Origin: Ranitomeya imitator
Taxonomy: Eukaryota
Assembly: GCF_032444005.1 (NCBI RefSeq)
Contig: NC_091288.1
Coordinates: 172,732,001 to 172,796,000 of the forward strand
DNA length: 64,000 nt
Direction: 5' to 3'
Numbering within the stretch: the stretch's first letter is position 1; every line of letters starts with the position of its first letter. Under the pieces are notes generated by a model that saw only the letters and a list, made by a program, of their open reading frames with translations, was not told where the DNA came from and searched no databases. The position numbers were made by a program, and so were the translations under genes. Of this stretch, positions 21,520 through 63,859 are shown piece after piece.

Positions 21520-21785
21520 TGGGCTGTGCATTATACTATATGGAGGATTATGGGCTGTGCATTATACTATATGGAGGATTATGGGCTGTGCATTATACTA
21601 TATGGAGGACTATGGGCTGTGCATTATACTATATGGAGGATTATGGGCTGTGCATTATACTATAGGGAGGACTATGGGCTGTGCATTATACTATCTGGAG
21701 GATTATGGGCTGTGCATTATACTATATGGAGGATTATGGGCTGTGCATTATACTATATGGGGGACTATGGGTTGTGCATTATGCT
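21520..21785. repeat. 31-bp minisatellite (TGGGCTGTGCATTATACTATATGGAGGATTA)n, about 8 copies
   Basis: Directly visible. Confidence 0.95.
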
Positions 21786-21800
21786 ATATGTATGGTATTG

Positions 21801-23115
21801 TAGAATTTACAATGGATATCACTTATGTAATTTAAGACGTAAGTGAAATCTTTGGCATTGTACTATACCTATATTTCTGCCATATCTGGGCATCATGAAT
21901 TGTGTTATGTGTTAAGACTCTTTTGCCCAGGGCTCACGAAAACCTGGAGCATGCCCTTCCTGCGACTGCTAGGCTTTTGGAAAGAGAGAGTTCAGCCTTG
22001 GTTGGTCTCATCATCTTTGTTACTGCACCGACTCCCATAAGAATTTCAGACATCTGACTTAGAACATCGCATAGCACTTGGACCAGTGTTATTCTATGGC
22101 GCAGTTCAGATCTGCGATTCGGCAATGATAAGACAATTACAGCATGCTGCAATTGCATCAGAGAATCAGATCGCACTCACCCATACAAGTCCATGGGTGC
22201 GTGTCAAACACCAGACTATACTTGGACATCATCCGAGAGCAGTCCAATGATAGCAGATGCCAGGTAATGGAGGAGATGGAGAAATTACTTTCTCTGTCTC
22301 CTTCGCACCTGTGTGAGATAATCAGATCACAGTGCACTGACGCTTGGCTCAAGTTCTGACTGAGTTTGAGCTGTGTGTCGTTTGCATAATCGGCCCGATT
22401 CTGTTGCACGAGACACCATATGTTCATGTGACTGCAGCCTTACTGTCATCTCCCGAGATCTCGGGACGAGATCTGAATCTGAGCATGCGCCGCCCCCAGC
22501 GGCCATTTTCTCAGAGGCCACCGCATCGCAGCAATGGAGCTGCTGGTGCCTCCGGGCTTTGAGGAATTGGGAAATGCTGGAGGAGCCCCGACTCTGCATG
22601 AAGATACACCGCCCCACAGCACAGAGCCCTGACGCTGCACGAAGAGGAGCCGTCTCCCCACAGCACAGCACCCACGCGGCACAAAGAGGAGCAGCCGCCG
22701 CCGCTCCCCAGCACAGAGACCCCACGCTGCTACAATGAGGTAATAGGGGGATACTCCACTCACACTTTCCTGAGAGACGCCCCTTCTTCGTCATCGGGAC
22801 CACTTTCCCCCACCCACCATATACACATTGGTCTGCACCCGGCGTACAAGACGACACCCGGCATATAAGACGACCCCCAACTTTTAAGAAGATTTTCAGG
22901 GGTTAAAAAGTCATCTTATATGCCGGAAAATACGGTACTCCAGAAGCACAGCCCATCTAACATGTTTTATCCAACTGGATCCACTAAAAAGATCATAAGG
23001 CATCTTTATTACAAAACCAATAATGAGACAGAGATATATAGCCTGAATTGTATATTTAAATACATACTTTAGCAAAAAAAAAAATCAATTACTATATATA
23101 GTAAAAGGTAACATA
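21801..23115 (+). repeat. Local segmental duplication, copy 1 (contains the empty hAT site)
   Basis: Aligns with 33848-34838 plus 49993-50117; single ATCATAAG at 22992-22999. Confidence 0.9.
22451..22935. mobile_element. One-ended Tc2/pogo-type MITE
   Basis: Ends …GCCGGAAAATACGG|TA (CCGTA-type terminus). Absent from copy 2, which instead has about 290 bp (34490-34775) missing here. Confidence 0.65.
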
Positions 23116-30761: not shown

Positions 30762-31479
30762 TTATTTATCCAAAATATGATCCAACTATAATTTGTGCTA
30801 TAAGCTAACTATCCATTCCGTCCATATCACATATAACTGTTAACCAGTAGTGACACAGAAAAGCACAACCATCATTATTTAACCCAATAAAATCATTTTT
30901 ATTAAACAATTGAAAACATACATCATTAAAAATAAGACAAAAAAACAGTCCACACTTCTTCAGGGGGCGAAGAAGAAGTGTGGACGAAACGTGCGTCGGG
31001 TTAGAGTGACCGGACACTCTTCCTTACACTCAGCAGTAAGTATTGTGTTTTCTTACTGCCGCCCGGCAATATATCAATATTTAGTTCATTCAATTAGGAG
31101 AACAACACTTAGAATTTTGGAGGTTATTGTCGCAGCGGTGGTTATCTTACTTTACATGTAGCAGACATGGGCGGGTAATACCCTATTATAATGTGGATTT
31201 CTTGTAGTCAATACCACGGATACCTAAGAGGGTGATTTGATTCCAGCGCCCAGCTGAGTAGTTTGAAGCTTACTGTTGTATAAATACATGCTGTGTGGTT
31301 TATGAGTTGAGTAGTTCATAGGTCCCTCACATTTGAGATACCTGTTTTTTTGTCTTATTTTTAATGATGTATGTTTTCAATTGTTTAATAAAAATGATTT
31401 TATTGGGTTAAATAATGATGGTTGTGCTTTTCTGTGTCACTACTGGTTAACAGTTATATGTGATATGGACGGAATGGAT
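30762..31479. mobile_element. Penelope-like insertion with inverted arms
   Basis: 14-bp TSD AGAACCTAATAATT at 30748-30761 and 31480-31493; 30809-30947 is the reverse complement of 31343-31481; hammerhead-like motif at the inversion junction. Confidence 0.75.
30945..31002. ncRNA. Hammerhead-like motif split across the inversion junction
   Basis: The inverted arm gives CCCC-CTGAAGA-AGTGTGGAC and the forward arm gives GAAGAAGTGTGGAC-GAAAC-GTGC-GTC-GGG. Together they reconstruct a minimal type I hammerhead. Confidence 0.55.
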
Positions 31480-31757
31480 AGAACCTAATAATTGTATGAT
31501 ACAATATTGTTCTGCTCCAGGAAGACATCCAGGCCTCTCTTGAACCCCTCGACTGAGTTCGCCATCACCACCTCCTCAGGCAAGCAATTCCAGATTCTCA
31601 CTGCCCTAACAGTAAAGAATCCTTTTCTATGTTGGTGGAAAAACCTTCTCTCCTCCAGACGCAAAGAATGCCCCCTTGTGCCCGTCACCTTCCTTGGTAT
31701 AGGAAGGATAGATGCCCTGCTTAAAAACCAGTGTCATACAATGACAGCGGTATTCAA

Positions 31758-33758: not shown

Positions 33759-33836
33759 CAGTGCGAAAGTATTCGGCTCCCTGGAACTTTTCAACCTTTT
33801 CCCACATATCATGCTTCAAACATAAAGATACCAAAT
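33759..33836 (+). mobile_element. Tc1 left-TIR fragment, same family as 50118
   Basis: TA|CAGTGCGAAAGTATTCGGCTCCCTGGAACTTTTCAACC…GATACCAAAT is nearly identical to 50118-50200. Confidence 0.9.
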
Positions 33837-35922
33837 TCACTATAAGATAGAATTTACAATAGATATCACTTATGTAATCTAAGAAGTAAGTGAAATCTTT
33901 GGCATTGTACTATACCTATATTTCTCTGCCATATCTGGGCATCATGAATCGTGTTAAGACTCTTTTGCCCAAGGCCTACAAAAACCTGGAGCATGCCCTT
34001 CCTGCGACTGCTAGGCTTTTGGAAAGAGAGAGTTCAGCCTTGGTTGGTTTCATCATCTTTGTTTCTGCACCGACTCCCATAAGAATTTCAGACATCTGAC
34101 TTAGAACATCGCATAGCACTTGGACCAGTGTTATTCTATGGCGCAGTTCAGATCTGCGATTCGGCAATGATAAGACAATTACAGCATGCTGCAATTGCAT
34201 CCGAGAATCAGATCGCGCTCACCCATACAAGTCCATGGATGCGTGTCAAACACCAGACTATACTTTGATGTCATCGGAGTGCAGTACAATTATAGCAGAT
34301 GCCAGGTAATGGTGGAGATGGAGAAATTACTTTCTCTGTCTCCTTCGCACCTGTGTGAGATAATTAGATCACAGTGCACTGACGCTTGGCTCAAGTTCTG
34401 ACAGAGTTTGAGCTGCGTGTCATTTGCATAATCGGCCCGATTCTTTTGCACGAGACACCATATGTTCATGTGACTGCAGCCTTACTGTCATAAAAGGAAA
34501 AATCAGGCACCACAATGGAAGAAACCAAAACACAACTAAAAAGATCATGAAAAAATCTAAAATGTGGGGAATAGAGAGCACAATAGGGCGTTACCCTATA
34601 CATGGAGACTAGGTAAGCGTTTGTCTAGCTCTCATCTGGTGACAGGCACAATTACTATGTAGGCATGAATTAAAACAGCTGCTTCTGCCCTGTGGCTGGT
34701 GGATAGATCCTCCAGAAAATACTGGATACTATGAATAAGAAAACCTTAATATTATCATTGTTGAATAATTGGTTTACTCCAAAAGCACAGCCCATCTAAC
34801 GTGTTTTATCCAACTGGATCCACTAAAAAGATCATAAGTAGAGTTGAGCGACCTTGACCTTTTTAGAGTCGAGCCGGGTTTTGCGAAACCCGACTATGTC
34901 CAAAGTCGGGTCGAGTGAAATCGGCCGATTATGACGTAAAGTCGGGATCGACCGAAACACGAAACCCAATGCAAGTCAATGGGGCAGCATAGTCGGCAGT
35001 GAGTGGGGGCCAGGAAAACACCTAGAGTGGCCATTTTAATGTCAAAACCATCCATTCTTCTTAATGAAGCTTGTCAAGCGTAATTTACCTTATAATAATT
35101 GGAAGGCATTTGAAATTGGGGGTCATTTGGCTAAAGTTGTGGGGGGTAGGGCTGGTTCAAGTAATTAGTGGGCCCAGGAAATCTGGACCACGTCACGGCA
35201 GTGGAGCAGGGAGAGGTAAGTATTTCAACTTTGCAAGTGCTGTGAACCTGAGCAAGCAGGGGGGGCCCACTCGTTGGCATTGGCACTGGCACAGGGCCCC
35301 TCAAAGTACAGCGGTGTGTTTGCACGGCGGGGGCGCCTCCCACCGGCAGCAACACTTTTGCGTACTATGAGAGGCCCTGTGCCAGTGACGTCGCCAACTA
35401 GTATTCCTCCCCCCACCTGATGAAGGAACCTGCACTTTCATCTGCACCTTCCTCTTTGTCCCCGTGTAAGGTGGTATGGTATGCGGGAAGAGCAACCTGA
35501 CTTTCAGCAGGGTCACAATGTTGTTGTGTAGCGTGCACGGGGAATGTTGCGTTATGGGTCAATGTACCAGCAGACTCATCTATCACTGGCTGGGCAATGG
35601 GCACGATGAAGTGGAAACACAGATATAGGCCCAAAGAAGAAAGTGGGCTAAATGCAGTTCAAAATTGGTAACACAGGAATAACCAGGGGGCATTGCAGTG
35701 GAGGACAACTGGAATGAGAGGCTGACACAGAGAGTAGGGCCAAATCAGTAAGTAGTCGAAATGCAGTTCAAAATTGGCAACCGTAGTAAACAGGCGGCAC
35801 AGCTTTGTTCAGTGGAGGAGAACAGCAAGGAGTGGCAGACACCGATAGTAGGCCCCAAACCAACTAGTACGCCAAATGCAGTTGTTCCATTTAACCACAA
35901 TTTAATGAGAGCCTGAAGATAG

Positions 35923-38028
35923 AAGCTCAGGAAAGGCAACCTGGGGAACACCTTGGAGTGTAACACACCATCTCTCTCCACCCCATACCCATTTTGTATG
36001 GCCTAATGCAGTGTACTTTTCTACAACTACTAAACGAGAGTCGGAAGACCGAAGCAATGGCAAGGAAACCTGGGGAACACCTTAGAGTGTAACACACCCT
36101 CTCTCTACACCCCATACCCAATTTGAAGGTCTAATGCAGTGTAGTTTCCAAGAACTACTAAACGAGAGCCGGAAGATCGAAGCTCAGGAAAGGCAACCTG
36201 GGGAACACCTTGGAGTGTAACACACCCTCTCGCTACACCCCATACCCAATTTGAAGGCCTAATGCAGCGTAGTTTCCGACAACTACTAAACGAGAGCCGG
36301 AATATCGAAGCTCAGGAAAGGCAACCTGGGGAACACCTTGGAGTGTAACACACCCTCTCTCTACACCCCATACCCAATTTGTAGGCCTAATGCAGCGTAG
36401 TTTCCGACAACTACTAAACGAGAGCCGGAATATCGAAGCTCAGGAAAGGCAACCTGGGGAACACCTTGGAGTGTAACACACCCTCTCTCTACACCCCATA
36501 CCCAATTTGAAGGCCTAATGCAGTGTAGTTTCCAAGAACTACTAAACGAGAGCCGGAAGATCGAAGCTCAGGAAAGGCAACCTGGGGAACACCTTGGAGT
36601 GTAACACACCCTCTCGCTACACCCCATACCCAATTTGAAGGCCTAATGCAGCGTAGTTTCCAACAACTACTAAACGAGAGCCGGAAGATCGAAGCTCAGG
36701 AAAGGCAACCTGGGGAACACCTTGGAGTGTAACAAACCCTCTCTCTACACCCCATACCCAATTTGTAGGCCTAATGCAGCGTAGTTTCCGACAACTACTA
36801 AACGAGAGCATGAAGATCGAAGCTCAGGAAAGGCAACCTGGGGAACACCTTGGAGTGTAACACACCCTCTCTCTACACCCCATACCCAATTTGTAGGCCT
36901 AATGCAGCGTAGTTTCCGACAACTACTAAACGAGAGCCGGAATATCGAAGCTCAGGAAAGGCAACCTGGGGAACACCTTGGAGTGTAACACACCCTCTCT
37001 CTACACCCCATACCCAATTTGAAGGCCTAATGCAGTGTAGTTTCCAAGAACTACTAAACGAGAGCCGGAAGATCGAAGCTCAGGAAAGGCAACCTGGGGA
37101 ACACCTTGGAGTGTAACACACCCTCTCACTACACCCCATACCCAATTTGAAGGCCTAATGCAGCGTAGTTTCCAACAACTACTAAACGAGAGCCGGAAGA
37201 TCGAAGCTCAGGAAAGGCAACCTGGGGAACACCTTGGAGTGTAACAAACCCTCTCTCTACACCCCATACCCAATTTGTAGGCCTAATGCAGCGTAGTTTC
37301 CGACAACTACTAAACGAGAGCATGAAGATCGAAGCTCAGGAAAGGCAACCTGGGGAACACCTTGGAGTGTAACACACCCTCTCTCTACACCCCATACCCA
37401 ATTTGTAGGCCTAATGCAGCGTAGTTTCCGACAACTACTAAACGAGAGCCGGAATATCGAAGCTCAGGAAAGGCAACCTGGGGAACACCTTGGAGTGTAA
37501 CACACCCTCTCTCTACGCCCCATACCCAATTTGTAGGCCTAATGCAGCGTAGTTTCCGACAACTACTAAACGAGAGCCGGAATATCGAAGCTCAGGAAAG
37601 GCAACCTGGGGAACACCTTGGAGTGTAACACACCCTCTCTCTACACCCCATACCCAATTTGAAGGCCTAATGCAGTGTAGTTTCCAAGAACTACTAAACG
37701 AGAGCCGGAAGATCGAAGCTCAGGAAAGGCAACCTGGGGAACACCTTGGAGTGTAACACACCCTCTCGCTACACCCCATACCCAATTTGAAGGCCTAATG
37801 CAGCGTAGTTTCCAACAACTACTAAACGAGAGCCGGAAGATCGAAGCTCAGGAAAGGCAACCTGGGGAACACCTTGGAGTGGAACACACCATCTCTCTAC
37901 ACCCCATACCCAATTTGAAGGCCTAATGCAGAGTAGTTTCCAAGAACTACTAAACGAGAGCCGGAAGATCGAAGCTCAGGAAAGGCAACCTGGGGAACAC
38001 CTTGGAGTGTAACACAACGTCTCTCTAC
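35923..38028. repeat. 128-bp tandem array, about 16.5 copies, inside the hAT
   Basis: GAAGCTCAGG recurs at 36179, 36307, 36435 … 37971; identical ORFs at 36617 and 37129 show a 512-bp (4-unit) higher-order repeat. Confidence 0.97.
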
Positions 38029-38481
38029 ACGACGGAAGGGCTGATTCTTAGGAAGGAAGGCTGTTGGAAATAAGCATTGCGCGTCCGAGGGTGATTATAT
38101 TCTTATTAGGTATATACTCACCCTCGGACGCGCCCTGCTTCTTTATTTGGAATGAATGTTTATTTGCAATGTGGTGTTGACTTTCTCTATTATTTTGGTA
38201 ATTAATGATTTTATTATTTTCATTATTTTGCATCTTCTCGGCAATAATATAAAGAAGACGCGACAGGACAACACTCGGTGGATGCCATATGTGTGTTTTC
38301 AATTTAAAAAAACTTTCAGTTAACTACTTGCAGGAGAAAGTAATTGTAGCTGGTGGCCATTTTTAGTACTGTACCAGATTTTAGTTGTGTGTTTGTTTTT
38401 AATGTTAAAATGTCTGCATTTGATATCTCACCAGTATTTTCTTTTTTATAAGCAAAATACTTATTTTTATATTTTCTGATG

Positions 38482-41400
38482 TTGGTTCCAGGGGTACACG
38501 GCCAGCAGTGCCCTGGTCAGTGTAGTAGTAGTTGAAAGAATGGACCGCAGACAGGCATCGAAGGCCTAAAATAATAACACATGGCTGTAGGCAATTTTAA
38601 ATTGGTTCCAGGGGTACACGGACAGCAGTGGTGTGGTCAGTGGAGGCCTAGTGGAAGGAGTGACCGCAGACAGGCATCGAAGGCCTAAAATAATAACACA
38701 TGGCTGTAGGCAATTTTAAATTGGTTCCAGGGGTACACGGGCAGCAGTGACCTGGTCAGTGTAGTAGTAGTTGAAAGAATGGACCGCAGACAGGCATCGA
38801 AGGCCTAAAATAAAAAAATTGGGCTGGCTGTAGGCAATTTTAAATTGGTTCCAGGGGTACACGGGCAGCAGTGGTGTGGTCAGTGGAGGCCTAGTGGAAG
38901 GAGTGACCGCAGACAGGCATCGAAGGCCTAAAATAATAACACATGGCTGTAGGCAATTTTAAATTGGTTCCAGGGGTACACGGACAGCAGTGGTGTGGTC
39001 AGTGGAGGCCTAGTGGAAGGAGTGACCGCAGACAGGCATCGAAGGCCTAAAATAATAACACATGGCTGTAGGCAATTTTAAATTGGTTCCAGGGGTACAC
39101 GGACAGCAGTGACCTGGTCAGTGTAGTAGTAGTTGAAAGAATGGACCACAGACAGGCATCGAAGGCCTAAAATAAAAAAATTGGGCTGGCTGTAGGCAAT
39201 TTTAAATTGGTTCCAGGGGTACACGGACAGCAGTGGTGTGGTCAGTGGAGGCCTAGTGGAAGGAGTGACCGCAGACAGGCATCGAAGGCCTAAAATAATA
39301 ACACATGGCTGTAGGCAATTTTAAATTGGTTCCAGGGGTACACGGACAGCAGTGGTGTGGTCAGTGGAGGCCTAGTGGAAGGAGTGACCGCAGACAGGCA
39401 TCGAAGGCCTAAAATAATAACACATGGCTGTAGGCAATTTTAAATTGGTTCCAGGGGTACACGGACAGCAGTGACCTGGTCAGTGTAGTAGTAGTTGAAA
39501 GAATGGACCGCAGACAGGCATCGAAGGCCTAAAATAAAAAAATTGGGCTGGCTGTAGGCAATTTTAAATTGGTTCCAGGGGTACACGGGCAGCAGTGGTG
39601 TGGTCAGTGGAGGCCTAGTGGAAGGAGTGACCGCAGACAGGCATCGAAGGCCTAAAATAATAACACATGGCTGTAGGCAATTTTAAATTGGTTCCAGGGG
39701 TACACGGACAGCAGTGGTGTGGTCAGTGGAGGCCTAGTGGAAGGAGTGACCGCAGACAGGCATCGAAGGCCTAAAATAATAACACATGGCTGTAGGCAAT
39801 TTTAAATTGGTTCCAGGGGTACACGGACAGCAGTGACCTGGTCAGTGTAGTAGTAGTTGAAAGAATGGACCGCAGACAGGCATCGAAGGCCTAAAATAAA
39901 AAAATTGGGCTGGCTGTAGGCAATTTTAAATTGGTTCCAGGGGTACACGGACAGCAGTGGTGTGGTCAGTGGAGGCCTAGTGGAAGGAGTGACCGCAGAC
40001 AGGCATCGAAGGCCTAAAATAATAACACATGGCTGTAGGCAATTTTAAATTGGTTCCAGGGGTACACGGACAGCAGTGGTGTGGTCAGTGGAGGCCTAGT
40101 GGAAGGAGTGACCGCAGACAGGCATCGAAGGCCTAAAATAATAACACATGGCTGTAGGCAATTTTAAATTGGTTCCAGGGGTACACGGACAGCAGTGACC
40201 TGGTCAGTGTAGTAGTAGTTGAAAGAATGGACCGCAGACAGGCATCGAAGGCCTAAAATAAAAAAATTGGGCTGGCTGTAGGCAATTTTAAATTGGTTCC
40301 AGGGGTACACGGGCAGCAGTGGTGTGGTCAGTGGAGGCCTAGTGGAAGGAGTGACCGCAGACAGGCATCGAAGGCCTAAAATAATAACACATGGCTGTAG
40401 GCAATTTTAAATTGGTTCCAGGGGTACACGGACAGCAGTGGTGTGGTCAGTGGAGGCCTAGTGGAAGGAGTGACCGCAGACAGGCATCGAAGGCCTAAAA
40501 TAATAACACATGGCTGTAGGCAATTTTAAATTGGTTCCAGGGGTACACGGACAGCAGTGACCTGGTCAGTGTAGTAGTAGTTGAAAGAATGGACCGCAGA
40601 CAGGCATCGAAGGCCTAAAATAAAAAAATTGGGCTGGCTGTAGGCAATTTTAAATTGGTTCCAGGGGTACACGGGCAGCAGTGACCTGGTCAGTGTAGTA
40701 GTAGTTGAAAGAATGGACCGCAGACAGGCTTAGAAGGCCTAACATAACAAACTTGGGCTGGCTGTAGGCACTTTTAAATTGGTTCCAGGGGTACACGGGC
40801 AGCAGTGGTCTGGTCAGTGGAAGTCTAGTGGAAGGAGTGACCGCAGACAGGCTTCCAAGGCCTAACATAACAAACTTGGGCTGGCTGTAGGCACTTTTAA
40901 ATTGGTTCCAGGGGTACACGGGCAGCAGTGGTCTGGTCAGTGGAAGTCTAGTGGAAGGAGTGACCGCAGACAGGCTTCCAAGGCCTAACATAACAAACTT
41001 GGGCTGGCTGTAGGCACTTTTAAATTGGTTCCAGGGGTACACGGGCAGCAGTGGTCTGGTCAGTGGAAGTCTAGTGGAAGGAGTGACCGCAGACAGGCTT
41101 CCAAGGCCTAACATAACAAACTTGGGCTGGCTGTAGGCACTTTTAAATTGGTTCCAGGGGTACACGGGCAGCAGTGGTCTGGTCAGTGGAAGTCTAGTGG
41201 AAGGAGTGACCGCAGACAGGCTTCGAAGGCCTAACATAACAAAATTGGGCTGGCTGTAGGCACTTTAAATTGGTTCCAGGGGTACATGGGCAGCAGTGTA
41301 TGGTCAGTGGAAGTCTAGTGGAAGGAGTGACGGCAGACAGTCTTCGAAGGCCTAACATAACAAAATTGGGCTGACTGTAGGCACTTTTAAATTGGTTCCA

Positions 41401-41490
41401 GGGTAACACGGCCAGCAGTGGCCTGGTCAGTGTAGTAGTTGTAGAAAGAAGGGACCGCAGACAGGCTTCGAAGGCCTAACATAACAAAAA
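38482..41490. repeat. 119-124 bp tandem array, about 25 copies, inside the hAT
   Basis: TTGGTTCCAGG spacing cycles 119/124/119 (362-bp trimer) to about 40655, then switches to a 120-bp variant block. Confidence 0.97.
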
Positions 41491-41948
41491 TGTCAAAACA
41501 ATGGTATTGTCAGTGCCAGGCATTGAAGGATGTCAGCGGCTAGACTACACATTGGTGAAGCTGTGAGAGATAATTTTGCTAGTGGTAGAGCACTGTTTGA
41601 GCTGGGGGGGGGAACTGTCTTGTGGCCGGCGGTACAGGCACAGGGCCCCTCATATTACAACGGTGTGTCTGACGTTGGGTGCGCACCACCACCGCCAGAG
41701 ACACTTTATTGTACTATGAGGGACCCAGTGGCAGTGCCGTCGACCAAAAGCGGCCACACCCACCTCTTCAGACAAACAGCACTCTCAAGGGTCCAAGCGC
41801 AAAGTGGCGATAGCACGGCCCCGTGTGGGGAGTTTGGCCATTTCGTGAGGTGGAAACATGTCGTATGCTGGACAATCAGGTGAAGAAAATTACGAGATTG
41901 GAAAAGTCATTCAGAATAGTCCACAGGCAAGACCTTTTCATAGGAAAG

Positions 41949-44900
41949 CTAGGTGTCAGCCGGGCAGGGTGGGGCAAAAGATTTTGAAATCCAGTTGTGG
42001 TTCATTTTAATGAAGGTTAGATCATCTACATTTTGGGTAGCCAGACGAGTCCTTTTTTCTGTTAGTATTGAACCTGCAGCACTGAATACTCTTTCTGATA
42101 GGACACTAGCTGCCGGGCAAGCAAGCTCCTGCAATGCATATTCTGCCAATTCTGGCCAGGTGTCTAATTTGGATGCCCAGTAATCAAATGGGAATGACGG
42201 TTGAGGGAGAACGTCGATAAGGGATGAAAAATAGTTTGTAACCATACTGGACAAATGTTGTCTCCTGTCACTTTGAATTGATGCTGCAGTACCTGTCCTG
42301 TCTGCGGTCATAGAAAAATCACTCCACAACCTGGTCAGAAAACCCCTCTGTCCAACGCCACTTCTGATTTCTGCCCCTCTAACACCTCTGGTCTGCTGGC
42401 CCCTGGAGCTCGTGTGAGAACGATCACGGGCGCTGTGTGCAGGGAATGCCAGAAGCAAACGGTCAACAAGAGTTGATTGTTTTGTTGCTAATATTAGTTC
42501 CAAGTTCTCATGTGGCATAATATTTTGCAATTTGCCTTTATAGCGAGGATCAAGGAGGCAGGCCAACCAGTAATCGTCATCGTTCATCATTTTTGTAATG
42601 CGTGTGTCCCTTTTGAGGATACGCAAGGCATAATCCGCCATGTGGGCCAAAGTTCCCGTTGTCAAATCTGCGGTTGTGCTTGGTTGAGGGGCAGTTGCAG
42701 GCAAATCTACGTCACTTGTGTCCCTCAAAAAACCAGAACCCGGCCTTGCCACGCCACCAATTTCCCGTGCCCCCGGGAAAGCTTCCTCATTAAAAATATA
42801 CTCATCCCCATCATCCTCCTCATCCTCCACCTCCTCTTCGCCCGGTACCTCGTCATGTACACTGCCCTGACCAGACAATCGCTGACTGTCATCAAGGCTT
42901 TCCTCTTCCTCTGGTGCAGACGCCTGATCCTTTATGTGCGTCAAACTTTGCATCAGCAGACGCATTAGGGGGATGCTCATGCTTATTATGGCGTTGTCTG
43001 CACTAACCAGCCGTGTGCATTCCTCAAAACACTGAAGGACTTGACACATGTCTTGAATCTTCGACCACTGCACACCTGACAACTCCATGTCTGCCATCCT
43101 ACTGCCTGCCCGTGTATGTGTATCCTCCCACAAAAACATAACAGCCCGCCTCTGTTCGCACAGTCTCTGAAGCATGTGCAGTGTTGAGTTCCACCTTGTT
43201 GCAACGTCTATGATTAGGCGATGCTGGGGAAGGTTCAAAGAACGCTGATAGGTCTGCATACGGCTGGAGTGTACAGGCGAACGGCGGATATGTGCGCAAA
43301 GTCCACGCACTTTGAGGAGCAGGTCGGATAACCCCGGATAACTTTTCAGGAAGCACTGCACCACCAGGTTTAAGGTGTGAGCCAGGCAAGGAATGTGTTT
43401 CAGTTGGGAAAGGGAGATGGCAGCCATGAAATTCCTTCCGTTATCACTCACTACCTTGCCTGCCTCAAGATCTACAGTGCCCAGCCACGACTGCGTTTCT
43501 TGCTGCAAGAACTCGGACAGAACTTCCGCGGTGTGTCTATTGTCGCCCAAACACTTCATAGCCAATACAGCCTGCTGACGTATGCCAGTAGCTGCCCCAT
43601 AATGGGAGACCTGGTGTGCAACAGTGGCAGGTGCGGATGGAGTGTTTGTGCGACTGCGGTCTGTGGACGAGCTCTTGCTTCTGCAGGAGGACGAGGAGGA
43701 GGAGGAGGAGGGGGTGCGAACGGCTACAGACAACTGTTTACTAGACCGTGGGCTAGGCAGAACTGTCCCAAACTTGCTGTCCCCTGTGGACCCTGAATCC
43801 ACCACATTTACCCAGTGTGCCGTGATGGACACGTAACGTCCCTGGCCATGCCTACTGGTCCATGCATCTGTTGTCAGGTGCACCTTTGTGCTCACAGATT
43901 GCCTGAGTGCATGGACGATGCGCTCTTTAACATGCTGGTGGAGGGCTGGGATGGCTTTTCTGGAAAAAAAGTGTCGACTGGGTAGCTCGTAGCGTGGTAC
44001 AGCGTAGTCCATCAGGTCTTTGAAAGCTTCGCTTTCAACTAACCGGTAGGGCATCATCTCTAACGAGATTAGTCTAGCTATGTGGGCGTTCAAACCCTGT
44101 GTACGCGGATGCGAGGCTAAGTATTTCCTTTTTCTAACCATAGTCTCATGTAGGGTGAGCTGGACTGGAGAGCTGGAGATCGTGGAACTAGCGGGGGTGC
44201 CGGTGGACATGGCAGACTGAGAGACGGTGGGAGATGGTATTGTTGCCGCCGGTGCCCTAGATGCAGTGTTTCCTACTACGAAACTGGTGATTCCCTGACC
44301 CTGACTGCTTTGGCCTGGCAAAGATACCTGCACAGATACAGCAGGTGGTGCGCTAAATGGTGGTCCTACACTGCCGGAAGGGATGTTGCGTTGATGACTA
44401 GCTTCATTGGCCGAGGGTGCAACAACCTTAAGGGACGTTTGGTAGTTAGTCCAAGCTTTCAAATGCATGGTGGTTAAATGTCTATGCATGCAACTAGTAT
44501 TGAGACTTTTCAGATTCTGACCTCTGCTTAAGGAAGTAGAACATTTTTGACAGATGACTTTGCGCTGATCAATTGGATGTTGTTTAAAAAAATGCCAGAC
44601 TGCACTCTTTCTAGCATCGGATACCTTTTCAGGCATTGCAGACTGAGCTTTAACCGGATGGCCACGCTGTCCTCCACCAGGTTTTGGCTTTGCCACGCGT
44701 TTTGGGCAAGATACGGGCCCGGCAGATGGAACCTGTGGCGATGTTGATGCCTGCTGCGGCCCCTCCTCCTCCTCTGCTTCAGAACTGCTGCCGCCTGCAC
44801 CCTGTTCCCCCAATGGCTGCCAATCGGGGTCAAGAACTGGGTCATCTAATAACTCTTCTTGTACCTCCTGCGCAACTTCGTCTGTGTCACCGTGTCGTTC

Positions 44901-45524
44901 GGTGGTATAGCGTTCGTGATGGGGCAACATAGTCTCATCAGGGTCTGATTCTTGATCAGCACCCTGCGAGGGCAATGTTGTGGTCTGAGTCAAAGGACCA
45001 GCATAGTAGTCTGGCTGTGGCTGTGCGTCAGTGCACTCCATGTCAGATTCAATTTGTAATGGGCATGGACTGTTAACTGCTTCACTTTCTAAGCCAGGGA
45101 CGGTATGTGTAAAGAGCTCCATGGAGTAACCCGTTGTGTCGCCTGCTGCATTCTTCTCTGTTGTTGTTTTTGCTGAAGAGGACAAGGAAGTGACTTGTCC
45201 CTGACCGTGAACATCCACTAACGACGCGCTGCTTTTACTTTTACCAGTTTCACGAGATGAGGCAAAAGAGCTAGAGGCTGAGTCAGCAAGATAAGCCAAA
45301 ACTTGCTCTTGCTGCTCCGGCTTTAAAAGCGGTTTTCCTAATCCCAGAAAAGGGAGCGTTCGAGGCCTTGTGTAGCCGGACGACGAACCTGGCTCCACAG
45401 CTCCAGACTTAGGTGCAATATTTTTTCCCCCACGACCACCTGATGCTCCACCACTACCACTACCCTCATTACCAGCTGACAATGAACGCCCCCGGCCACG
45501 ACCTCTTCCACTAGACTTCCTCAT
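41949..45524 (-). CDS. hAT-superfamily transposase (BED zinc finger, DDE RNase H-like core, hATC dimerisation domain), 1191 aa
   Basis: BED: SAVWHFF…CQKC…HRHLTTMH; catalytic motifs LTTDAWTS, VSDNGRNF and SERVFS; CLAH (CxxH); TRWNS; uninterrupted ORF. Confidence 0.97.
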   Translation of the reverse strand: MRKSSGRGRGRGRSLSAGNEGSGSGGASGGRGGKNIAPKSGAVEPGSSSGYTRPRTLPFLGLGKPLLKPEQQEQVLAYLADSASSSFASSRETGKSKSSASLVDVHGQGQVTSLSSSAKTTTEKNAAGDTTGYSMELFTHTVPGLESEAVNSPCPLQIESDMECTDAQPQPDYYAGPLTQTTTLPSQGADQESDPDETMLPHHERYTTERHGDTDEVAQEVQEELLDDPVLDPDWQPLGEQGAGGSSSEAEEEEGPQQASTSPQVPSAGPVSCPKRVAKPKPGGGQRGHPVKAQSAMPEKVSDARKSAVWHFFKQHPIDQRKVICQKCSTSLSRGQNLKSLNTSCMHRHLTTMHLKAWTNYQTSLKVVAPSANEASHQRNIPSGSVGPPFSAPPAVSVQVSLPGQSSQGQGITSFVVGNTASRAPAATIPSPTVSQSAMSTGTPASSTISSSPVQLTLHETMVRKRKYLASHPRTQGLNAHIARLISLEMMPYRLVESEAFKDLMDYAVPRYELPSRHFFSRKAIPALHQHVKERIVHALRQSVSTKVHLTTDAWTSRHGQGRYVSITAHWVNVVDSGSTGDSKFGTVLPSPRSSKQLSVAVRTPSSSSSSSSCRSKSSSTDRSRTNTPSAPATVAHQVSHYGAATGIRQQAVLAMKCLGDNRHTAEVLSEFLQQETQSWLGTVDLEAGKVVSDNGRNFMAAISLSQLKHIPCLAHTLNLVVQCFLKSYPGLSDLLLKVRGLCAHIRRSPVHSSRMQTYQRSLNLPQHRLIIDVATRWNSTLHMLQRLCEQRRAVMFLWEDTHTRAGSRMADMELSGVQWSKIQDMCQVLQCFEECTRLVSADNAIISMSIPLMRLLMQSLTHIKDQASAPEEEESLDDSQRLSGQGSVHDEVPGEEEVEDEEDDGDEYIFNEEAFPGAREIGGVARPGSGFLRDTSDVDLPATAPQPSTTADLTTGTLAHMADYALRILKRDTRITKMMNDDDYWLACLLDPRYKGKLQNIMPHENLELILATKQSTLVDRLLLAFPAHSARDRSHTSSRGQQTRGVRGAEIRSGVGQRGFLTRLWSDFSMTADRTGTAASIQSDRRQHLSSMVTNYFSSLIDVLPQPSFPFDYWASKLDTWPELAEYALQELACPAASVLSERVFSAAGSILTEKRTRLATQNVDDLTFIKMNHNWISKSFAPPCPADT

Positions 45525-45789
45525 TGTTTTAAAAACGTAACCAAACTAACGTTATTTGTTGCAGTCACACAACTTACACGGTGAGCTATAACTTCAGTAT
45601 GATTTAGCTACCCCTTTACAGGTTGGTGAGACCACAGCGAAAATCAGGCCCAATGTTACACACTCTTTTTTTGGTGGCTGCAAATTAGAGAGATGCCCCA
45701 CACGCAGGACTGTCACTGAAGCACAAATGTTAATATTAATGTCACACTATTATTTTTTTTTTATTTTTATTTTTTTCAGGAACACTTTA

Positions 45790-46905
45790 GAAACCCCCCA
45801 AAAAAAAAAAAATAGATTTTTGCAGGGAGAATTTAGAAAACAAATGTAACAAACTATATGCTTTCTATGGGCCACTGAGTGAGAGATGACGCACACAGGA
45901 ATCAGGAGTGGCACACAAGCCCAGAGGCCAATATTTTTCTACCAATGATTGATGGAGTTATTTTCTCTGGTAGATTTTGGAACCCAAATCAAGGAAAAAA
46001 AATGTAGGCTTTCTATGGACCACAATTGGAGAGAGAGAGAGAGAGAGAGATGGCACACCCAGGAGTCAAGACTGGCACACAAGCAGAAAGGCCAATATTA
46101 ATCTCCCACTGTTTTTTTTGGTTGTTTTTTTTTTTTTTTTTTCAGGGAGACTTTAGAAAAAAAAATAATAAAAAAAATATGATTTTATCAGGAAGAATTT
46201 AGAAACCAAATAAAATAAAATGATTTTTTCAGGGAGAATTTATAAAACAAATAAAACCAAAAATAGGCGTTCTATGGCCCACTGACTGAGAGATGACGCA
46301 CCCAGGAGTCAAGACTGGCACACAAGCAGAAAGGCCAATATTAATCTCCCACTGTTTTTTTTGGTTGTTTTTTTTTTTTTTTTTTCAGGGAGACTTTAGA
46401 AAAAAAAATAATAAAAAAAATATGATTTTATCAGGAAGAATTTAGAAACCAAATAAAATAAAATGATTTTTTCAGGGAGAATTTATAAAACAAATAAAAC
46501 CAAAAATAGGCGTTCTATGGCCCACTGACTGAGAGATGACGCACCCAGGAGTCAAGACTGGCACACAAGCAGAAAGGCCAATATTAATCTCCCACTGTTT
46601 TTTTTTTTTTTTTTCAGGGAGACTTTAGAAAAAAAAATAATAAAAAAAATATGATTTTATCAGGAAGAATTTAGAAACCAAATAAAATAAAATGATTTTT
46701 TCAGGGAGAATTTAGAAAACAAATAAAACCAAAAATAGGCGTTCTATGGCCCACTGACTGAGAGATGACGCACACAGGAGTCAGGAGTGGCACACAAACC
46801 CAGAGGCCAATATTTTTCTACCAATGATTGATGTAGTTATTTTCTCTGGTAGATTTTAGAACCCAAATCAAGGAAAAAAAATATAGGCTTTCTATGGACC
46901 ACAAT

Positions 46906-46948
<43 letters not shown>

Positions 46949-47280
46949 CACCCAGGAGTCAAGACTGGCACACAAGCAGAAAGGCCAATATTAATCTCCC
47001 ACTGTTTTTTTGGTTGTTTTTTTTTTTTTTTTTTCAGGGAGACTTTAGAAATAAAAATAATAAAAAAAATATGATTTTATCAGGAAGAATTTAGAAACCA
47101 AATAAAATAAAATGATTTTTTCAGGGAGAATTTAGAAAACAAATAAAACCAAAAATATGCGTTCTATGGCCCACTGACTGAGAGAGAGAGAGAGATGGAA
47201 CGCTTAGTACTGGCACACAAGCCCAAAGGGCAATATTAATCTCCCTTTTTTTTTCCAGGGAGAATTTCTGAAACCCAAAA
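45790..47280. repeat. Irregular A/T-rich tandem repeats (~240-bp blocks) inside the hAT
   Basis: GGAGTCAAGACTGGCACACAAGCAGAAAGGCCAATATTAATCTCCC recurs near 46062, 46304, 46548 and 46955. Confidence 0.9.
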
Positions 47281-49130
47281 AAAAAATAAAATAGGCTTTC
47301 TATGGCCCACTATTTGTGAGAGAGATGGGACGCTCAGGACTGGCACAGATGGCACGCTCAGGACTGGCACAGAAGCCCAGAGGCCAATATTAATCTCCCT
47401 TTTTTTCTGGGAGAATTTATAAAACCAAAAAAATATTTAAATAGGCTTTCTATGGCCCACTATTTGTGAGAGAGATGGCACGCTCAGGACTGGCACAGAT
47501 GGCACGCTCACAACTGGCACACAAGCCCAGAGGCCAATATTAATCTCCCTTTTTTCAGGGAAAATTTATAAAACAAAAAAAAAAATTAAATAGGCTTTCT
47601 ATGGCCCACTATTTGTGAGAGAGATGGCACGCTCAGGGCTGGCACAGATGGCACGCTCAGGACTGGCACACAAGCCCAGAGGCCAATATTAATCTCCCTT
47701 TTTTTCAGGGAGAATTTATAAAACCCCCAAAAAAAATAAAATAGGCTTTCTATGGCCCACTATTTGTGAGAGAGATGGCACGCTCAGGACTGGCACAGAT
47801 GGCACGCTCACAACTGGCACACAAGCCCAGAGGCCAATATTAATCTCCCTTTTTTCAGGGAGAATTTCTAAAACCCAAAAAAAAAATAAAATAGGCTTTC
47901 TATGGCCCACTATTTGTGAGAGAGATGGGACGCTCAGGACTGGCACAGATGGCACGCTCAGGACTGGCACAGAAGCCCAGAGGCCAATATTAATCTCCCT
48001 TTTTTTCTGGGAGAATTTATAAAACCAAAAAAATATTTAAATAGGCTTTCTATGGCCCACTATTTGTGAGAGAGATGGCACGCTCAGGACTGGCACAGAT
48101 GGCACGCTCACAACTGGCACACAAGCCCAGAGGCCAATATTAATCTCCCTTTTTTCAGGGAAAATTGATAAAACAAAAAAAAAAATTAAATAGGCTTTCT
48201 ATGGCCCACTATTTGTGAGAGAGATGGCACGCTCAGGGCTGGCTGGCACAGATGGCACGCTCAGGACTGGCACACAAGCCCAGAGGCCAATATTAATCTC
48301 CCTTTTTTTCTGGGAGAATTTATAAAACCAAAAAAATATTTAAATAGGCTTTCTATGGCCCACTATTTGTGAGAGAGATGGCACGCTCAGGACTGGCACA
48401 GATGGCACGCTCACAACTGGCACACAAGCCCAGAGGCCAATATTAATCTCCCTTTTTTCAGGGAAAATTGATAAAACAAAAAAAAAAATTAAATAGGCTT
48501 TCTATGGCCCACTATTTGTGAGAGAGATGGCACGCTCAGGGCTGGCTGGCACAGATGGCACGCTCAGGACTGGCACACAAGCCCAGAGGCCAATATTAAT
48601 CTCCCTTTTTTTCTGGGAGAATTTATAAAACCAAAAAAATATTTAAATAGGCTTTCTATGGCCCACTATTTGTGAGAGAGATGGCACGCTCAGGACTGGC
48701 ACAGATGGCACGCTCACAACTGGCACACAAGCCCAGAGGCCAATATTAATCTCCCTTTTTTCAGGGAAAATTTATAAAACAAAAAAAAAAATTAAATAGG
48801 CTTTCTATGGCCCACTATTTGTGAGAGAGATGGCACGCTCAGGGCTGGCACAGATGGCACGCTCAGGACTGGCACACAAGCCCAGAGGCCAATATTAATC
48901 TCCCTTTTTTTCAGGGAGAATTTATAAAACCAAAAAAAAAAATAAATAGGCTTTCTATGGCCCACTATTTGTGAGAGAGATGGCACACTCAGGACTGGCA
49001 CACAAGCCCAAAGGCCAATATTAATCTCCCACTGTATTTTTATCAGGGAGAATTTATACACCCCACAAAAAAAAATACAGAAAAATGAAAAGGCTTTCTA
49101 TGGCCCACTATGTGAGAGAGATGGCACACA
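47281..49130. repeat. ~150-bp tandem array, about 13 copies, inside the hAT
   Basis: ATAGGCTTTCTATGGCCCAC at 47291, 47441, 47590, 47741, 47891, 48041 and onward. Confidence 0.95.
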
Positions 49131-49674
49131 CAGGGATGGCACTCTAGCAGAAATGCCAAATTGCCAATCTTAATCTCCCACCAAAAAAAAAAAAAAAAAA
49201 AAAACAGGGAATGTCCTACAATTACTATCTCCCTGCCTGCAGTAATCTCAGCCAGGTATGGCAGGCAGCTACTATCTCCCTGCCTGCAGTAATCTCAGCC
49301 AGGTATGGCAGGCAGCAATAAGGAGTGGACTGATGCACAAATGAAATAAAAAGTGTGGACAAACAAAAAAGATAGCTGTGCAGAAAGGAAGGAACAAGAG
49401 GATTTGTGCTTTGAAAAAAGCAGTTGGTTTGCACAGCGGCGTACACACAGCAATGCAGCTATCAGGGAGCCTTCTAGGGCAGCCCAATGAGCTACAGCGC
49501 TGAGGGGAAAAAAAAAAAAAAAAAAACTTCCACTGTCCCTGCACACCGAGGGTGGTGTTGGACAGTGCAAATCGCTGCAGCACAAGCGGTTTTGTGGTTA
49601 ATGGACCCTGCCTAACGCTATCCCTGCTTCTGACAAAGCGGCAGCAACCTCTCCCTAAGCTCAGATCAGCAGCA

Positions 49675-49830
49675 GTAAGATGGCGGTCGGCGGGAACGCC
49701 TCTTTATAGCCCCTGTGACGTCGCAGACAGCAAGCCAATCACTGCAATGCCCTTCTCTAAGATGGTGGGGACCAGGACCTATGTCATCACGCTGCCCACA
49801 CTCTGCGTTTACCTTCATTGGCTGAGAAAT
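49675..49830 (-). promoter_or_regulatory. Candidate Pol II promoter of the transposase
   Basis: On the minus strand: CCAAT elements (~49816, 49735), CRE-like GTGACGTC (49715-49722), TATA-like CTATAAAG (49702-49709), YY1 motif CCGCCATCTT (49677-49686), all pointing toward the ORF. Confidence 0.55.
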
Positions 49831-50501
49831 GGCGCTTTTCGCGTCATTGAAACGCGACTTTGGCGCGAAAGTCGCGTACCGCATGGCCGACCCCGCACAG
49901 GGGTCGGATCGGGTTTCATGAAACCCCGACTTAGCCAAAAGTCGGCGACTTTTGAAAATGTTCGACCCGTTTCGCTCAACCCTAATCATAAGGCATCATT
50001 GAAAAGGCATTTACAAAACCAATAATGAGACAGAGATGTATAGCCTGAATGGTATATTTAAAATACATACTTTGTTAGCAAAAAAATCAATTACTACATA
50101 TAGTAAAAGGTAATATACAGTGCCTTGCGAAAGTATTCGGCTCCCTGGAACTTTTCAACCTTTTCCCACATATCATGCTTCAAACATAAAGATACCAAAT
50201 GTAATTTTTTGGTGAAGAATCAACAAGTGGAACACAATTGTGAAGTTGAACTAAATTTAATGGCTATTTTAAATTTTTGTGGAAATTCAAAACCTGAAAA
50301 GTGGGGCGTGCAATATTATTCGGCCCCTTTACTTTCAGTGCAGCAAACTCACTCCAGAAGATCATTGTGGATCTCTGAATGATCCAATGTTGTCCTAAAT
50401 AATAATAATAATAATCTTTATTTATTTAGCGCCTACATATTCCGCAGCGCTTTACAGCTTAACAGTTTCAAACACAACAGTCATAAGTAATAACGTTAGC
50501 A

Positions 50502-63461: not shown

Positions 63462-63859
63462 GTTAAAGGGGGTCGAATAATATTGCACGCCCCACTTTTC
63501 AGTTTTTGAATTTCCACAAAAATTTAAAATAACCAATTAATTTCGTTCAACTTCACAATTGTGTTCCACTTGTTGTTGATTCTTCACCAAAAATTTACAT
63601 TTGGTATCTTTATGTTTGAAGTATGATATGTGGGAAAAGGGTGAAAAGTTTCAGGGAGCCGAATACTTTCGCAAGGCACTGAACTTACCTTGTAATGTCT
63701 TCACATCCTGTTCCGTCCAGATGTGTCCGGATCCCAGAATTCCAAGCGCGGCAGAAGTTCACCGACCTCCATATTGGGACACCCAAGTTGTGGGTGTCTC
63801 AATATGGAAACTTCTGGTGGTACCAGCCTCTTGTGCAGTACCACCAGTGGTACACATTC

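What the first reader, a model, noticed from the sequence alone, without database searches (positions are those of the whole stretch)
34831..49992. Giant, apparently intact hAT transposon with its empty site preserved in a nearby paralogue
Seen: perfect 8-bp TSD, near-perfect TIRs, CpG-rich subterminal palindromes still intact, and an uninterrupted 1191-aa ORF. The paralogous block has a single ATCATAAG at 22992-22999, which confirms the boundaries and dates the insertion after the local duplication. Known: autonomous hATs are usually a few kb, so 15 kb is very large. Inference: a young and possibly active element.
Basis: partly seen in the sequence, partly recalled or inferred. Interest (0 to 1): 0.8.

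Follow-up and report, generated by a model that had tools for sequence, protein, structure and literature searches.

The report
Giant young frog hAT transposon
This is one intact 15-kb copy of a cut-and-paste (hAT) jumping gene that has very recently spread to roughly 20,000 almost identical copies in a poison-frog genome; more than half of its length is its own internal tandem repeats.

Summary
Window 34839-49984 is a 15,146-bp element with a perfect 8-bp target duplication (ATCATAAG), 13-bp inverted ends (12/13) and a 1191-aa open frame. A local paralogue keeps the unfilled site at 22992-22999.

The protein is a complete hAT transposase. It has a BED finger, the D553/D694/E1144 triad, W778, CxxH and a hAT dimerisation domain, and its predicted fold matches only Hermes.

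The size comes from four internal tandem arrays (about 8.7 kb, 57%), not from captured genes.

The host is Ranitomeya imitator (5.96-Gb assembly). The genome holds about 20,500 exact left ends and about 20,800 exact ORF 35-mers (divergence about 0.4%). At least 39 further ORFs encode the identical protein. Sixty of 60 end pairs tested on one chromosome have matching, mostly distinct target duplications with the Ac-family nTnnnnAn signature. Their median length is 13.1 kb (7.6-22.6), so this copy is typical of its family.

Domestication and artefact are excluded. Recent mass transposition is shown. Present-day activity and transcription are not shown, because the RNA evidence was inconclusive.

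hAT abundance in this species is published only at superfamily level. This scan has noted giant hATs elsewhere in this genome.

The parts
34831..34838 (.). Left copy of the 8-bp target-site duplication ATCATAAG
   Evidence: It fits nTnnnnAn. The paralogue has a single copy at 22992-22999.
34839..34851 (+). Terminal inverted repeat at the end downstream of the transposase gene (TAGAGTTGAGCGA)
   Evidence: 12/13 match to the other end. The 27-nt terminus occurs 20,491 times exactly in the genome.
34852..35000 (.). Subterminal region with repeated AGTCGG/AAGTCG motifs and the palindrome CGGGTTTTGCGAAACCCG. These are presumed transposase-binding sites.
   Evidence: AGTCGG or its complement occurs 4 times here. 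CpG o/e is 1.05. The binding function is inferred.
35907..38030 (.). Internal tandem array 1 (128-bp unit x 16.6, 95% matches)
   Evidence: A 35-mer from the unit occurs 109,043 times genome-wide, and all 100 listed hits lie inside element copies, 1-10 per copy.
38482..41489 (.). Internal tandem array 2 (119-bp unit x 25, higher-order 362 bp x 8.3). The 195-aa ORF at 40650-41237 is a repeat artefact.
   Evidence: The Pfam hits of that ORF have no significant stretch.
41490..41948 (-). 3' untranslated region with AATAAA at 41705-41710
   Evidence: read from the sequence. pi is 0.27% among 31 copies. Use as a polyadenylation signal is inferred.
41949..45524 (-). Transposase gene: a single 1191-aa ORF with BED finger, DDE RNase-H-like core, insertion domain and hAT dimerisation domain
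   Evidence: At least 39 other loci encode the identical protein.
45525..45704 (-). 5' leader next to the ATG. It holds a splice-acceptor-like TTTGCAG near 45680.
   Evidence: No splice joint was seen in the laid contigs, so splicing is not shown.
45705..47250 (.). Internal tandem array 3 (about 243-bp A/T-rich units)
47193..49162 (.). Internal tandem array 4 (150-bp unit x 12, higher-order 303 bp), related to array 3
   Evidence: Many unit-to-unit joints appear in DNA contigs, showing array length variants among copies.
49650..49830 (-). Promoter-like region: CCAAT 49817-49821, inverted CCAAT 49735-49739, GACGTCAC 49715-49722, TATAAA 49703-49708
   Evidence: read from the sequence. Promoter function is inferred and not tested.
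49831..49971 (.). Subterminal region at the end upstream of the gene, with AAGTCG repeats and the palindrome GGGTTTCATGAAACCC
   Evidence: AAGTCG or its complement occurs 5 times. CpG o/e is 1.17.
49972..49984 (-). Terminal inverted repeat at the end upstream of the gene (TAGGGTTGAGCGA on the minus strand)
   Evidence: The 25-nt terminus followed by nTnnnnA occurs 6,317 times exactly.
49985..49992 (.). Right copy of the target-site duplication ATCATAAG
22992..22999 (.). Unfilled target site in the local paralogous block

Best explanation
Window 34839-49984 is a complete, autonomous-type DNA transposon of the hAT superfamily (Ac-like branch) in the genome of the mimic poison frog Ranitomeya imitator. 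Its one gene encodes a 1191-aa transposase. By analogy with Hermes and Ac, the transposase is expected to bind the repeated AAGTCG-type motifs near both ends, cut the element out at the 13-bp inverted ends, and reinsert it with an 8-bp staggered cut at nTnnnnAn sites. That staggered cut produced the ATCATAAG duplication here.

The element is 15 kb because four tandem arrays (about 8.7 kb) sit in its non-coding parts on both sides of the gene. The arrays travel with the element and change in unit number between copies.

This copy belongs to a family that amplified very recently to about 20,000 near-identical, mostly gene-bearing copies. By a rough estimate (copy number times median length) that is about 1-4.5% of the assembly. 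This copy inserted after a local segmental duplication.

Shown here: the anatomy, the catalytic residues and fold, the copy number, the homogeneity, and the distinct TSDs with a target preference. Inferred: the chemistry of transposition, promoter use, the way copy number rises (transposition during replication or repair from the sister chromatid), and that the family is still moving today.
For: Structure:
- TSD, TIRs, ORF and arrays are confirmed.

Transposase:
- Pfam gives zf-BED (E 9.8e-10) and Dimer_Tnp_hAT (E 7.3e-11).
- The sequence matches Hermes and aligns SDNG, CxxH, TRWNS and SERxFS.
- Across 37 homologues D553, W555 and C713 are invariant, and D694, H716, W778 and E1144 are at least 90% conserved.
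- The AlphaFold model of residues 470-1191 has pLDDT 80.5 and pTM 0.81. Its only significant PDB matches are Hermes transposase chains (E 1e-15, target TM 0.65-0.71).

Family size and age:
- 39 of 39 scored genomic matches encode the identical protein.
- 23 of 31 ORFs are identical in DNA and the rest differ by 1 nt.
- The left-end 27-mer occurs 20,491 times exactly.
- One ORF 35-mer occurs 20,829 times exactly and 23,658 times with up to 1 mismatch, giving d of about 0.39%. A second ORF 35-mer occurs 20,654 times exactly.
- 65 of the first 100 gene-bearing copies keep the two 35-mers exactly 1300 nt apart.

Transposition:
- 60 of 60 end pairs on contig C1 (0-76 Mb) share the TSD interior, giving 57 distinct 8-mers with consensus GTnnnnAC.
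- About 68% of TAGAG ends carry T at -7 and A at -2. I estimate roughly 9% by chance from base composition (not computed).
- Element lengths have a median of 13.1 kb and a range of 7.6-22.6 kb.

Host and timing:
- A 100% protein match to R. imitator, and the 5.96-Gb assembly size equals GCA_027410445.1 (PMC12822217).
- The empty paralogous site is confirmed, and the paralogue differs from the filled block by 3-9%.
Against: No direct evidence of current activity was obtained. The runs guessed to be RNA cover arrays and ends as evenly as the gene. They showed no 5'-UTR splice joint and no defined transcript ends, so the signal may be DNA or read-through. No empty allele of this insertion exists elsewhere in the assembly.

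The 39 identical ORFs were picked as the best matches, so the share of intact genes among about 20,000 copies is only extrapolated.

Copy counts rest on 27-35-nt words and may include sister subfamilies. Two left-end variants exist. Only about 10,400 right subterminal 35-mers (up to 1 mismatch) were found, against about 19,600 for the left.

The Ser-rich and acidic low-complexity insertions in the catalytic region (pLDDT below 50) are untested for their effect on activity, although distant relatives share them.
Confidence: 0.9

Rival explanations
1. The family burst recently but is now silenced or extinct. This copy is then an intact-looking fossil that no longer moves, for example because of piRNA or DNA-methylation control.
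For: Neither transcription nor polymorphism could be shown. About 35% of sampled copies already lack one 35-mer or show length changes in the last third of the ORF. ORF CpG o/e of 0.58 is compatible with some methylation-driven decay.
Against: The modal ORF is identical over 3576 nt in 23 of 31 copies. Non-coding pi is only 0.27%. Shared variants define several source lineages. The terminal CpGs are undecayed, with o/e above 1.
Confidence: 0.3
2. The ORF is a domesticated hAT-derived host gene (ZBED4/6-like) and not a mobile-element gene.
For: Automatic annotation names its relatives 'zinc finger BED domain-containing protein 4/6-like'. The protein is unusually long (1191 aa).
Against: It sits between TIRs with a TSD. 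About 20,000 copies lie at different sites, each with its own TSD. The full catalytic triad is kept. The site is empty in the paralogue.
Confidence: 0.01
3. The many identical copies are an assembly or segmental-duplication artefact and not the result of transposition.
For: The genome is highly repetitive. Three of the 60 TSD 8-mers recur.
Against: 57 of 60 TSDs are distinct and 60 of 60 are matched at both ends. Element lengths differ. Runs from 8 studies and at least 3 organism labels hold the ORF. The few recurring TSDs are plausibly chance, given only four free positions under a GTnnnnAC preference (not computed).
Confidence: 0.01
4. The internal arrays are functional parts of the element (extra transposase-binding sites, insulators or decoys against silencing) and explain why full-length copies, not short derivatives, dominate.
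For: Arrays are present in every sampled copy and are confined to elements. ORF-bearing copies are as numerous as ends, and no MITE-sized pair occurred among 60 complete copies. Earlier notes from this scan suggest that other giant hAT families in the same genome share the layout; I did not check this.
Against: Array unit numbers vary widely (1-10 exact units per copy in the sample, 16.6 here) and element lengths range 7.6-22.6 kb, as expected for neutral slippage. The subterminal AAGTCG motif was examined only in the terminal 300 bp. No functional test was done.
Confidence: 0.15

Closest known systems
Hermes (Musca domestica) and hobo/Ac: the Ac family of hAT transposons
   Same: It shares the 8-bp TSD with the nTnnnnAn (GTnnnnAC) preference, short TIRs, repeated subterminal motifs, a BED finger, a DDE core with an insertion domain, and the hAT dimerisation domain. 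Hermes is the only significant structural match. The TSD rule for the Ac family is cited in PMC8961557, after Arensburger 2011.
   Different: Only 15-16% identity to Hermes. The transposase is about twice as long (1191 versus 612 aa), with a roughly 300-aa disordered N-terminus and low-complexity insertions. The element is 13-15 kb rather than about 3-4.6 kb (sizes of the reference elements from my own knowledge). Copy number is in the tens of thousands.
Tol2 of medaka (vertebrate autonomous hAT with near-identical copies)
   Same: It is a vertebrate hAT whose copies are almost identical and mostly full length, which implies very recent spread (from my own knowledge, not checked here).
   Different: Tol2 is about 4.7 kb with tens of copies and a multi-exon gene. 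This family has about 20,000 copies of about 13 kb and a single-exon ORF flanked by arrays.
Frog 'ZBED4/ZBED6-like' hAT transposases (Anomaloglossus, Leptodactylus, Hyperolius, Ranitomeya variabilis)
   Same: They show 35-41% identity (73-84% in R. variabilis) over most of the length, and P0006 and P0008 share the long N-terminus and the Ser-rich insertion. This points to a frog-wide lineage of long hAT transposases.
   Different: Those entries are gene-model annotations with no element context. Whether they sit in array-rich giant elements was not examined.
Tandem-repeat-bearing transposons (Tetris foldback of Drosophila virilis, PMC4079207; DTC84 MITE of Donax, PMC3879986)
   Same: These are mobile elements that carry internal tandem arrays which vary in unit number and are spread by transposition.
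   Different: They are a foldback element and a non-autonomous MITE. Here an autonomous hAT carries four arrays around an intact gene, and none of the 100 listed hits of the one array tested lay outside an element.

Membership tests
hAT superfamily | 8-bp target-site duplication | tested here: met
   ATCATAAG lies on both sides, and 60 of 60 other copies have matching TSDs.
hAT superfamily | Short terminal inverted repeats (about 10-25 bp) | tested here: met
   13 bp, 12/13, TAGRGTTGAGCGA.
hAT superfamily | Transposase with an N-terminal BED zinc finger | tested here: met
   PF02892, E 9.8e-10, residues 307-354. C325, C328, H349 and H354 are invariant.
hAT superfamily | RNase-H-like DDE catalytic core interrupted by an alpha-helical insertion domain with a conserved Trp | tested here: met
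   D553, D694, E1144, W778 and C713/H716 are conserved in 37 homologues. The model matches Hermes at E 1e-15 and TMt 0.65-0.71.
hAT superfamily | C-terminal hAT dimerisation domain | tested here: met
   PF05699, E 7.3e-11, residues 1110-1174.
hAT superfamily | Cut-and-paste excision with hairpin formation on flanking DNA | not testable with these tools
   This needs an excision and footprint assay.
Ac family of hAT (versus Buster and Tip) | Target consensus 5'-nTnnnnAn-3' | tested here: met
   10,386 TAGAG ends carry T....A. Of the first 75 TAGAG ends, 51 do (68%). Positions 1 and 8 favour G and C. The rule is cited in PMC8961557.
Ac family of hAT (versus Buster and Tip) | Phylogenetic grouping with reference Ac-family transposases | not tested
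Only Hermes was compared, by sequence and fold.
Domesticated ZBED gene | Single or low-copy orthologous locus without TIRs or TSD | tested here: not met
   About 20,000 copies have TIRs and their own TSDs, and the site is empty in the paralogue.
Autonomous (versus non-autonomous) element | Complete transposase ORF between functional-looking ends | tested here: met
   The 1191-aa ORF has no stop and all catalytic residues. Activity itself was not tested.

The most novel reading that the evidence does not exclude
This single autonomous hAT family is still transposing in Ranitomeya imitator. It moves 8-22-kb units as a matter of course, and it has reached about 20,000 full-length copies with almost no short derivatives. 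To my knowledge that is an unusually large burst for an autonomous cut-and-paste element in a vertebrate. The array-rich architecture or the long transposase would confer a cis-preference or escape from silencing. The element would then be a natural high-cargo vertebrate transposon system and a driver of recent genome growth.
Probability: 0.2. Interest if true: 0.85.

Novelty: new member of a known kind. Interest (0 to 1): 0.6.

Why it matters
Frog genomes are large and rich in transposons, yet hAT elements in this species are reported only as a superfamily total. That total is 97 Mb in the first assembly paper and 1.1 Gb in a later comparison (PMC8457190, PMC12822217).

This report gives an element-level picture. 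One family of 13-kb autonomous elements could alone account for tens to hundreds of megabases, and it has barely diverged.

Such a family is a candidate for a naturally active vertebrate hAT with a large natural cargo. It is a source of dispersed tandem arrays. It also offers a convenient set of young insertion markers for population work in a model of mimicry. If activity is confirmed, it would allow direct study of how a cut-and-paste element multiplies to this extent.

Tried and rejected
I therefore checked TSDs with end patterns anchored on the T and A of the target consensus.

2. Transcription could not be shown. All holders are assembled contigs whose RNA status is a guess. Laid on 45400-49992, they cover arrays and ends alike. 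The only joints are array-unit variants that are also present in DNA, and no 5'-UTR intron joint was seen. This counts neither for nor against expression.

3. A search for an empty allele of this insertion in the assembly found nothing, which is uninformative.

4. NCBIfam gave no hit, as expected for a library of bacterial and archaeal families.

5. The 195-aa ORF at 40650-41237 was rejected as a by-product of the 119-bp array.

6. The idea that the 'paralogue' is just another copy of a common repeat was rejected, because the junction-proximal flank matches only the local block.

7. I looked for short MITE-like derivatives. None occurred among the 60 complete copies (shortest 7.6 kb), but no direct genome-wide search was possible.

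8. The share of intact ORFs genome-wide could not be measured. Only a proxy is available: 65 of 100 copies keep two exact 35-mers at the right spacing.


Full report
**1. Observation**

The window reads ...AAAAAG ATCATAAG TAGAGTTGAGCGACC... at 34831 and ...TTTCGCTCAACCCTA ATCATAAG GCATC... at 49985. The element therefore spans 34839-49984 (15,146 bp).
- It is flanked by a perfect 8-bp duplication.
- Its 13-bp inverted ends differ at one position, TAGAG versus TAGGG.
- Both subterminal regions carry repeated AGTCGG/AAGTCG motifs and a CpG-rich palindrome.
- CpG o/e in the terminal 300 bp is 1.05-1.17, against 0.48 in the flanks.
- The only long ORF is 41949-45524 on the minus strand, 1191 aa.

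The paralogous block reads ...CCACTAAAAAG ATCATAAG GCATC... once, at 22992-22999. An alignment shows left-flank and right-flank homology running straight through that single octamer.

Block identities are 95% (33848-34491 versus 21801-22449), 97% (the last 64 nt) and 91% (the first 107 nt on the right). Genome-wide, the junction-proximal 64 nt match only this local block. Other parts of the flank hit old 70-84% repeats. So this is a true local duplication, and the insertion came after it.

**2. What the protein is**

- Pfam finds zf-BED (307-354, E 9.8e-10) and the hAT dimerisation domain (1110-1174, E 7.3e-11).
- phmmer against PDB sequences finds only Hermes transposase (E 2e-16). The alignment pairs VVSDNGRN with FVTDRGAN, IPCLAHTLN with INCSSHLLS, TRWNST with TRWNST, and SERVFS with SERTFS.
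- In an alignment with 36 homologues at 26-45% identity, D553, W555 and C713 are invariant. D694, H716, R777-W778-N779-S780 and S1143-E1144-R1145 are at least 90% conserved (full-length numbering is alignment position + 469).
- The BED ligands C325, C328, H349 and H354 are invariant in a 7-sequence alignment.
- An AlphaFold model of residues 470-1191 has pLDDT 80.5 and pTM 0.81. Confidence is low only in four low-complexity insertions.
- Foldseek against the PDB returns twelve Hermes chains (E 1e-15 to 1e-11, target TM 0.58-0.71). The next match is at E 0.1.

The protein is thus a complete hAT transposase with all known catalytic features. Relatives P0006 and P0008 (41% and 33% identity) share its long disordered N-terminus and the Ser-rich insertion. 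Other relatives at 35-41% identity are annotated 'ZBED4/6-like' in the frogs Anomaloglossus, Leptodactylus and Hyperolius. The library search found 10,915 homologues at E up to 1e-3, and 485 at E up to 1e-30.

**3. Why it is 15 kb**

Tandem Repeats Finder and self-BLAST show four arrays:

| Coordinates | Unit | Copies |
|---|---|---|
| 35907-38030 | 128 bp | 16.6 |
| 38482-41489 | 119 bp (higher-order 362 bp) | about 25 |
| 45705-47250 | about 243 bp | - |
| 47193-49162 | 150 bp (higher-order 303 bp) | about 12 |

Together they make up about 8.7 kb, or 57% of the element. No other protein-coding cargo was found among the long ORFs. The 195-aa ORF inside array 2 is a repeat artefact.

In gene orientation the layout is:
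- TIR, then the subterminal motifs;
- a promoter-like block (CCAAT, inverted CCAAT, GACGTCAC, TATAAA at 49703-49708);
- arrays 4 and 3, then a 180-nt leader;
- the ORF, then a 3' UTR with AATAAA at 41705-41710;
- arrays 2 and 1, then the subterminal motifs and the TIR.

**4. Host and family**

The protein matches a Ranitomeya imitator database entry at 100% over the shared part.

A six-frame search of the genome scored 39 candidates, and all 39 encode the identical 1191-aa protein. Among the window copy and 30 fetched loci, 23 ORFs are identical over 3576 nt and 8 differ by one base. Leader and 3'-UTR diversity among these copies is 0.27%. Shared variants mark at least two or three source lineages.

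Whole-genome word counts (the reversed-pattern control was 0 in every case):

| Word | Mismatches allowed | Hits |
|---|---|---|
| Left-end 27-mer | 0 | 20,491 |
| Left 35-mer | up to 1 | 19,567 |
| Right subterminal 35-mer | up to 1 | 10,361 |
| ORF 35-mer at nt 2101 | 0 | 20,829 |
| ORF 35-mer at nt 2101 | up to 1 | 23,658 |
| ORF 35-mer at nt 3401 | 0 | 20,654 |

The ratio of one-mismatch to exact ORF hits gives a mean divergence of about 0.39% per site for that CpG-free 35-mer. Of the first 100 gene-bearing copies on contig C1, 65 keep both ORF words exact and exactly 1300 nt apart. The 128-bp array word occurs 109,043 times. All 100 listed hits lie inside element copies, at 1-10 per copy.

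**5. Proof of transposition elsewhere**

Full sister copies could not be fetched. I therefore searched for the ends with the flank anchored on the T and A of the hAT target consensus.
- T....A. + left end gave 10,386 hits.
- Right end + .T....A gave 6,317 hits.
- Pairing by coordinate on C1 (0-76 Mb) gave 60 complete elements. In all 60 the four free interior TSD positions agree between the two ends (chance 1/256 each).
- 57 of the 60 octamers are distinct. Position 1 is G in 57% and position 8 is C in 55%, giving GTnnnnAC.
- About 68% of TAGAG ends have the T/A pair (51 of 75 in the sampled stretch). My rough estimate from base composition, not computed, is about 9% by chance.

nTnnnnAn is the Ac-family signature (PMC8961557, citing Arensburger 2011).

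The 60 elements have a median length of 13.1 kb, an interquartile range of 12.1-15.0 kb and a range of 7.6-22.6 kb. None is MITE-sized, and 31 of the 35 that could be checked carry the exact ORF word. This window's copy is therefore a typical family member. Multiplying roughly 5,600 to 20,000 copies by about 13 kb gives 70-270 Mb, or 1-4.5% of the assembly. This is an estimate, not a measurement.

**6. Other samples**

The ORF's 31-mers are held by 20 runs from 8 studies. Shares are 0.80-0.98 under the organism label that includes the likely source sample, and 0.72 and 0.37-0.55 under two other organism labels. Near-identical copies therefore exist beyond one individual and probably in congeners. 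R. variabilis database proteins are 73-84% identical.

Contigs of two runs guessed to be RNA, one unclassified run and one DNA run were laid on 45400-49992. They covered everything, arrays included. The only joints were array-unit variants that were also present in DNA. No intron joint between the promoter region and the leader was seen. Expression is therefore neither shown nor excluded. No empty allele of this locus occurs elsewhere in the assembly.

**7. Interpretation**

- The anatomy and the family data establish an autonomous-type hAT (Ac-like) element from a family that transposed on a massive scale very recently.
- Domestication and artefact are excluded.
- The chemistry (hairpin-mediated cut-and-paste with an 8-bp staggered integration) is inferred from Hermes and Ac.
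- The rise in copy number is presumably by transposition during replication or by repair from the sister chromatid.
- Array length differences among copies are most simply explained by slippage or unequal exchange. A function for the arrays is possible but untested.
- Whether the family moves today is the main open point. I put it at about 0.6-0.7.

**8. Novelty**

The literature held here gives only superfamily totals for this species. hAT is put at 97 Mb (1.37%), with 25% of the genome unclassified, in the first assembly paper, which is marked retracted (PMC8457190). A later comparison puts it at 1.1 Gb (PMC12822217). Neither these nor the papers on Oophaga and Dendrobates describe the element.

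Earlier notes of this scan report giant array-bearing hATs in other windows of the same genome. Those notes served as leads only.

This is a new, well-defined member of a known kind. It is unusual in size, in the share of full-length copies and in copy number.

Noticed in passing
window 51472-53208 and 23842-24162: A 42-bp satellite has about 40.6 units next to block B but only about 7-8 units at the paralogous place in block A. The array apparently expanded after the local duplication.
   Followed up: partly
window 30809-30948 and 31342-31481: A perfect 140-bp inverted repeat (100% identity) has a 393-bp spacer. It looks like a foldback or MITE-type element.
   Followed up: no
window 33762-33836, 50126-50200, 63599-63673 (also 50107-50334 versus 63460-63691): A Tc1-like end sequence (CAGTGCCTTGCGAAAGTATTCGG...) occurs as an exact 75-bp direct repeat just outside both edges of paralogous block B, and again inverted at 63.6 kb.
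   Followed up: no
window 16403-17066, 17121-17606, 18031-18391, 21474-21790: A cluster of short-unit tandem arrays (26/51, 30, 109 and 31 bp) lies upstream of paralogous block A.
   Followed up: no
G000 contig C1, lists: The family has two left-end variants, TAGAG (about 75%) and TAGGG (about 25%). In the few cases checked, copies with TAGGG ends lacked the right subterminal 35-mer of this copy, which suggests a sister subfamily with different right-end sequence.
   Followed up: partly
G000 contig C1, about 41.855-41.864 Mb: One element end lies about 1 kb inside another copy in the opposite orientation. This looks like a copy nested inside another copy of the same family.
   Followed up: no
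window 35282-35397 and 41631-41747: Two 79%-identical segments bracket arrays 1 and 2, and the first also forms an internal hairpin (35259-35309 / 35362-35412). The 3' non-coding region may have been duplicated before the arrays grew.
   Followed up: no
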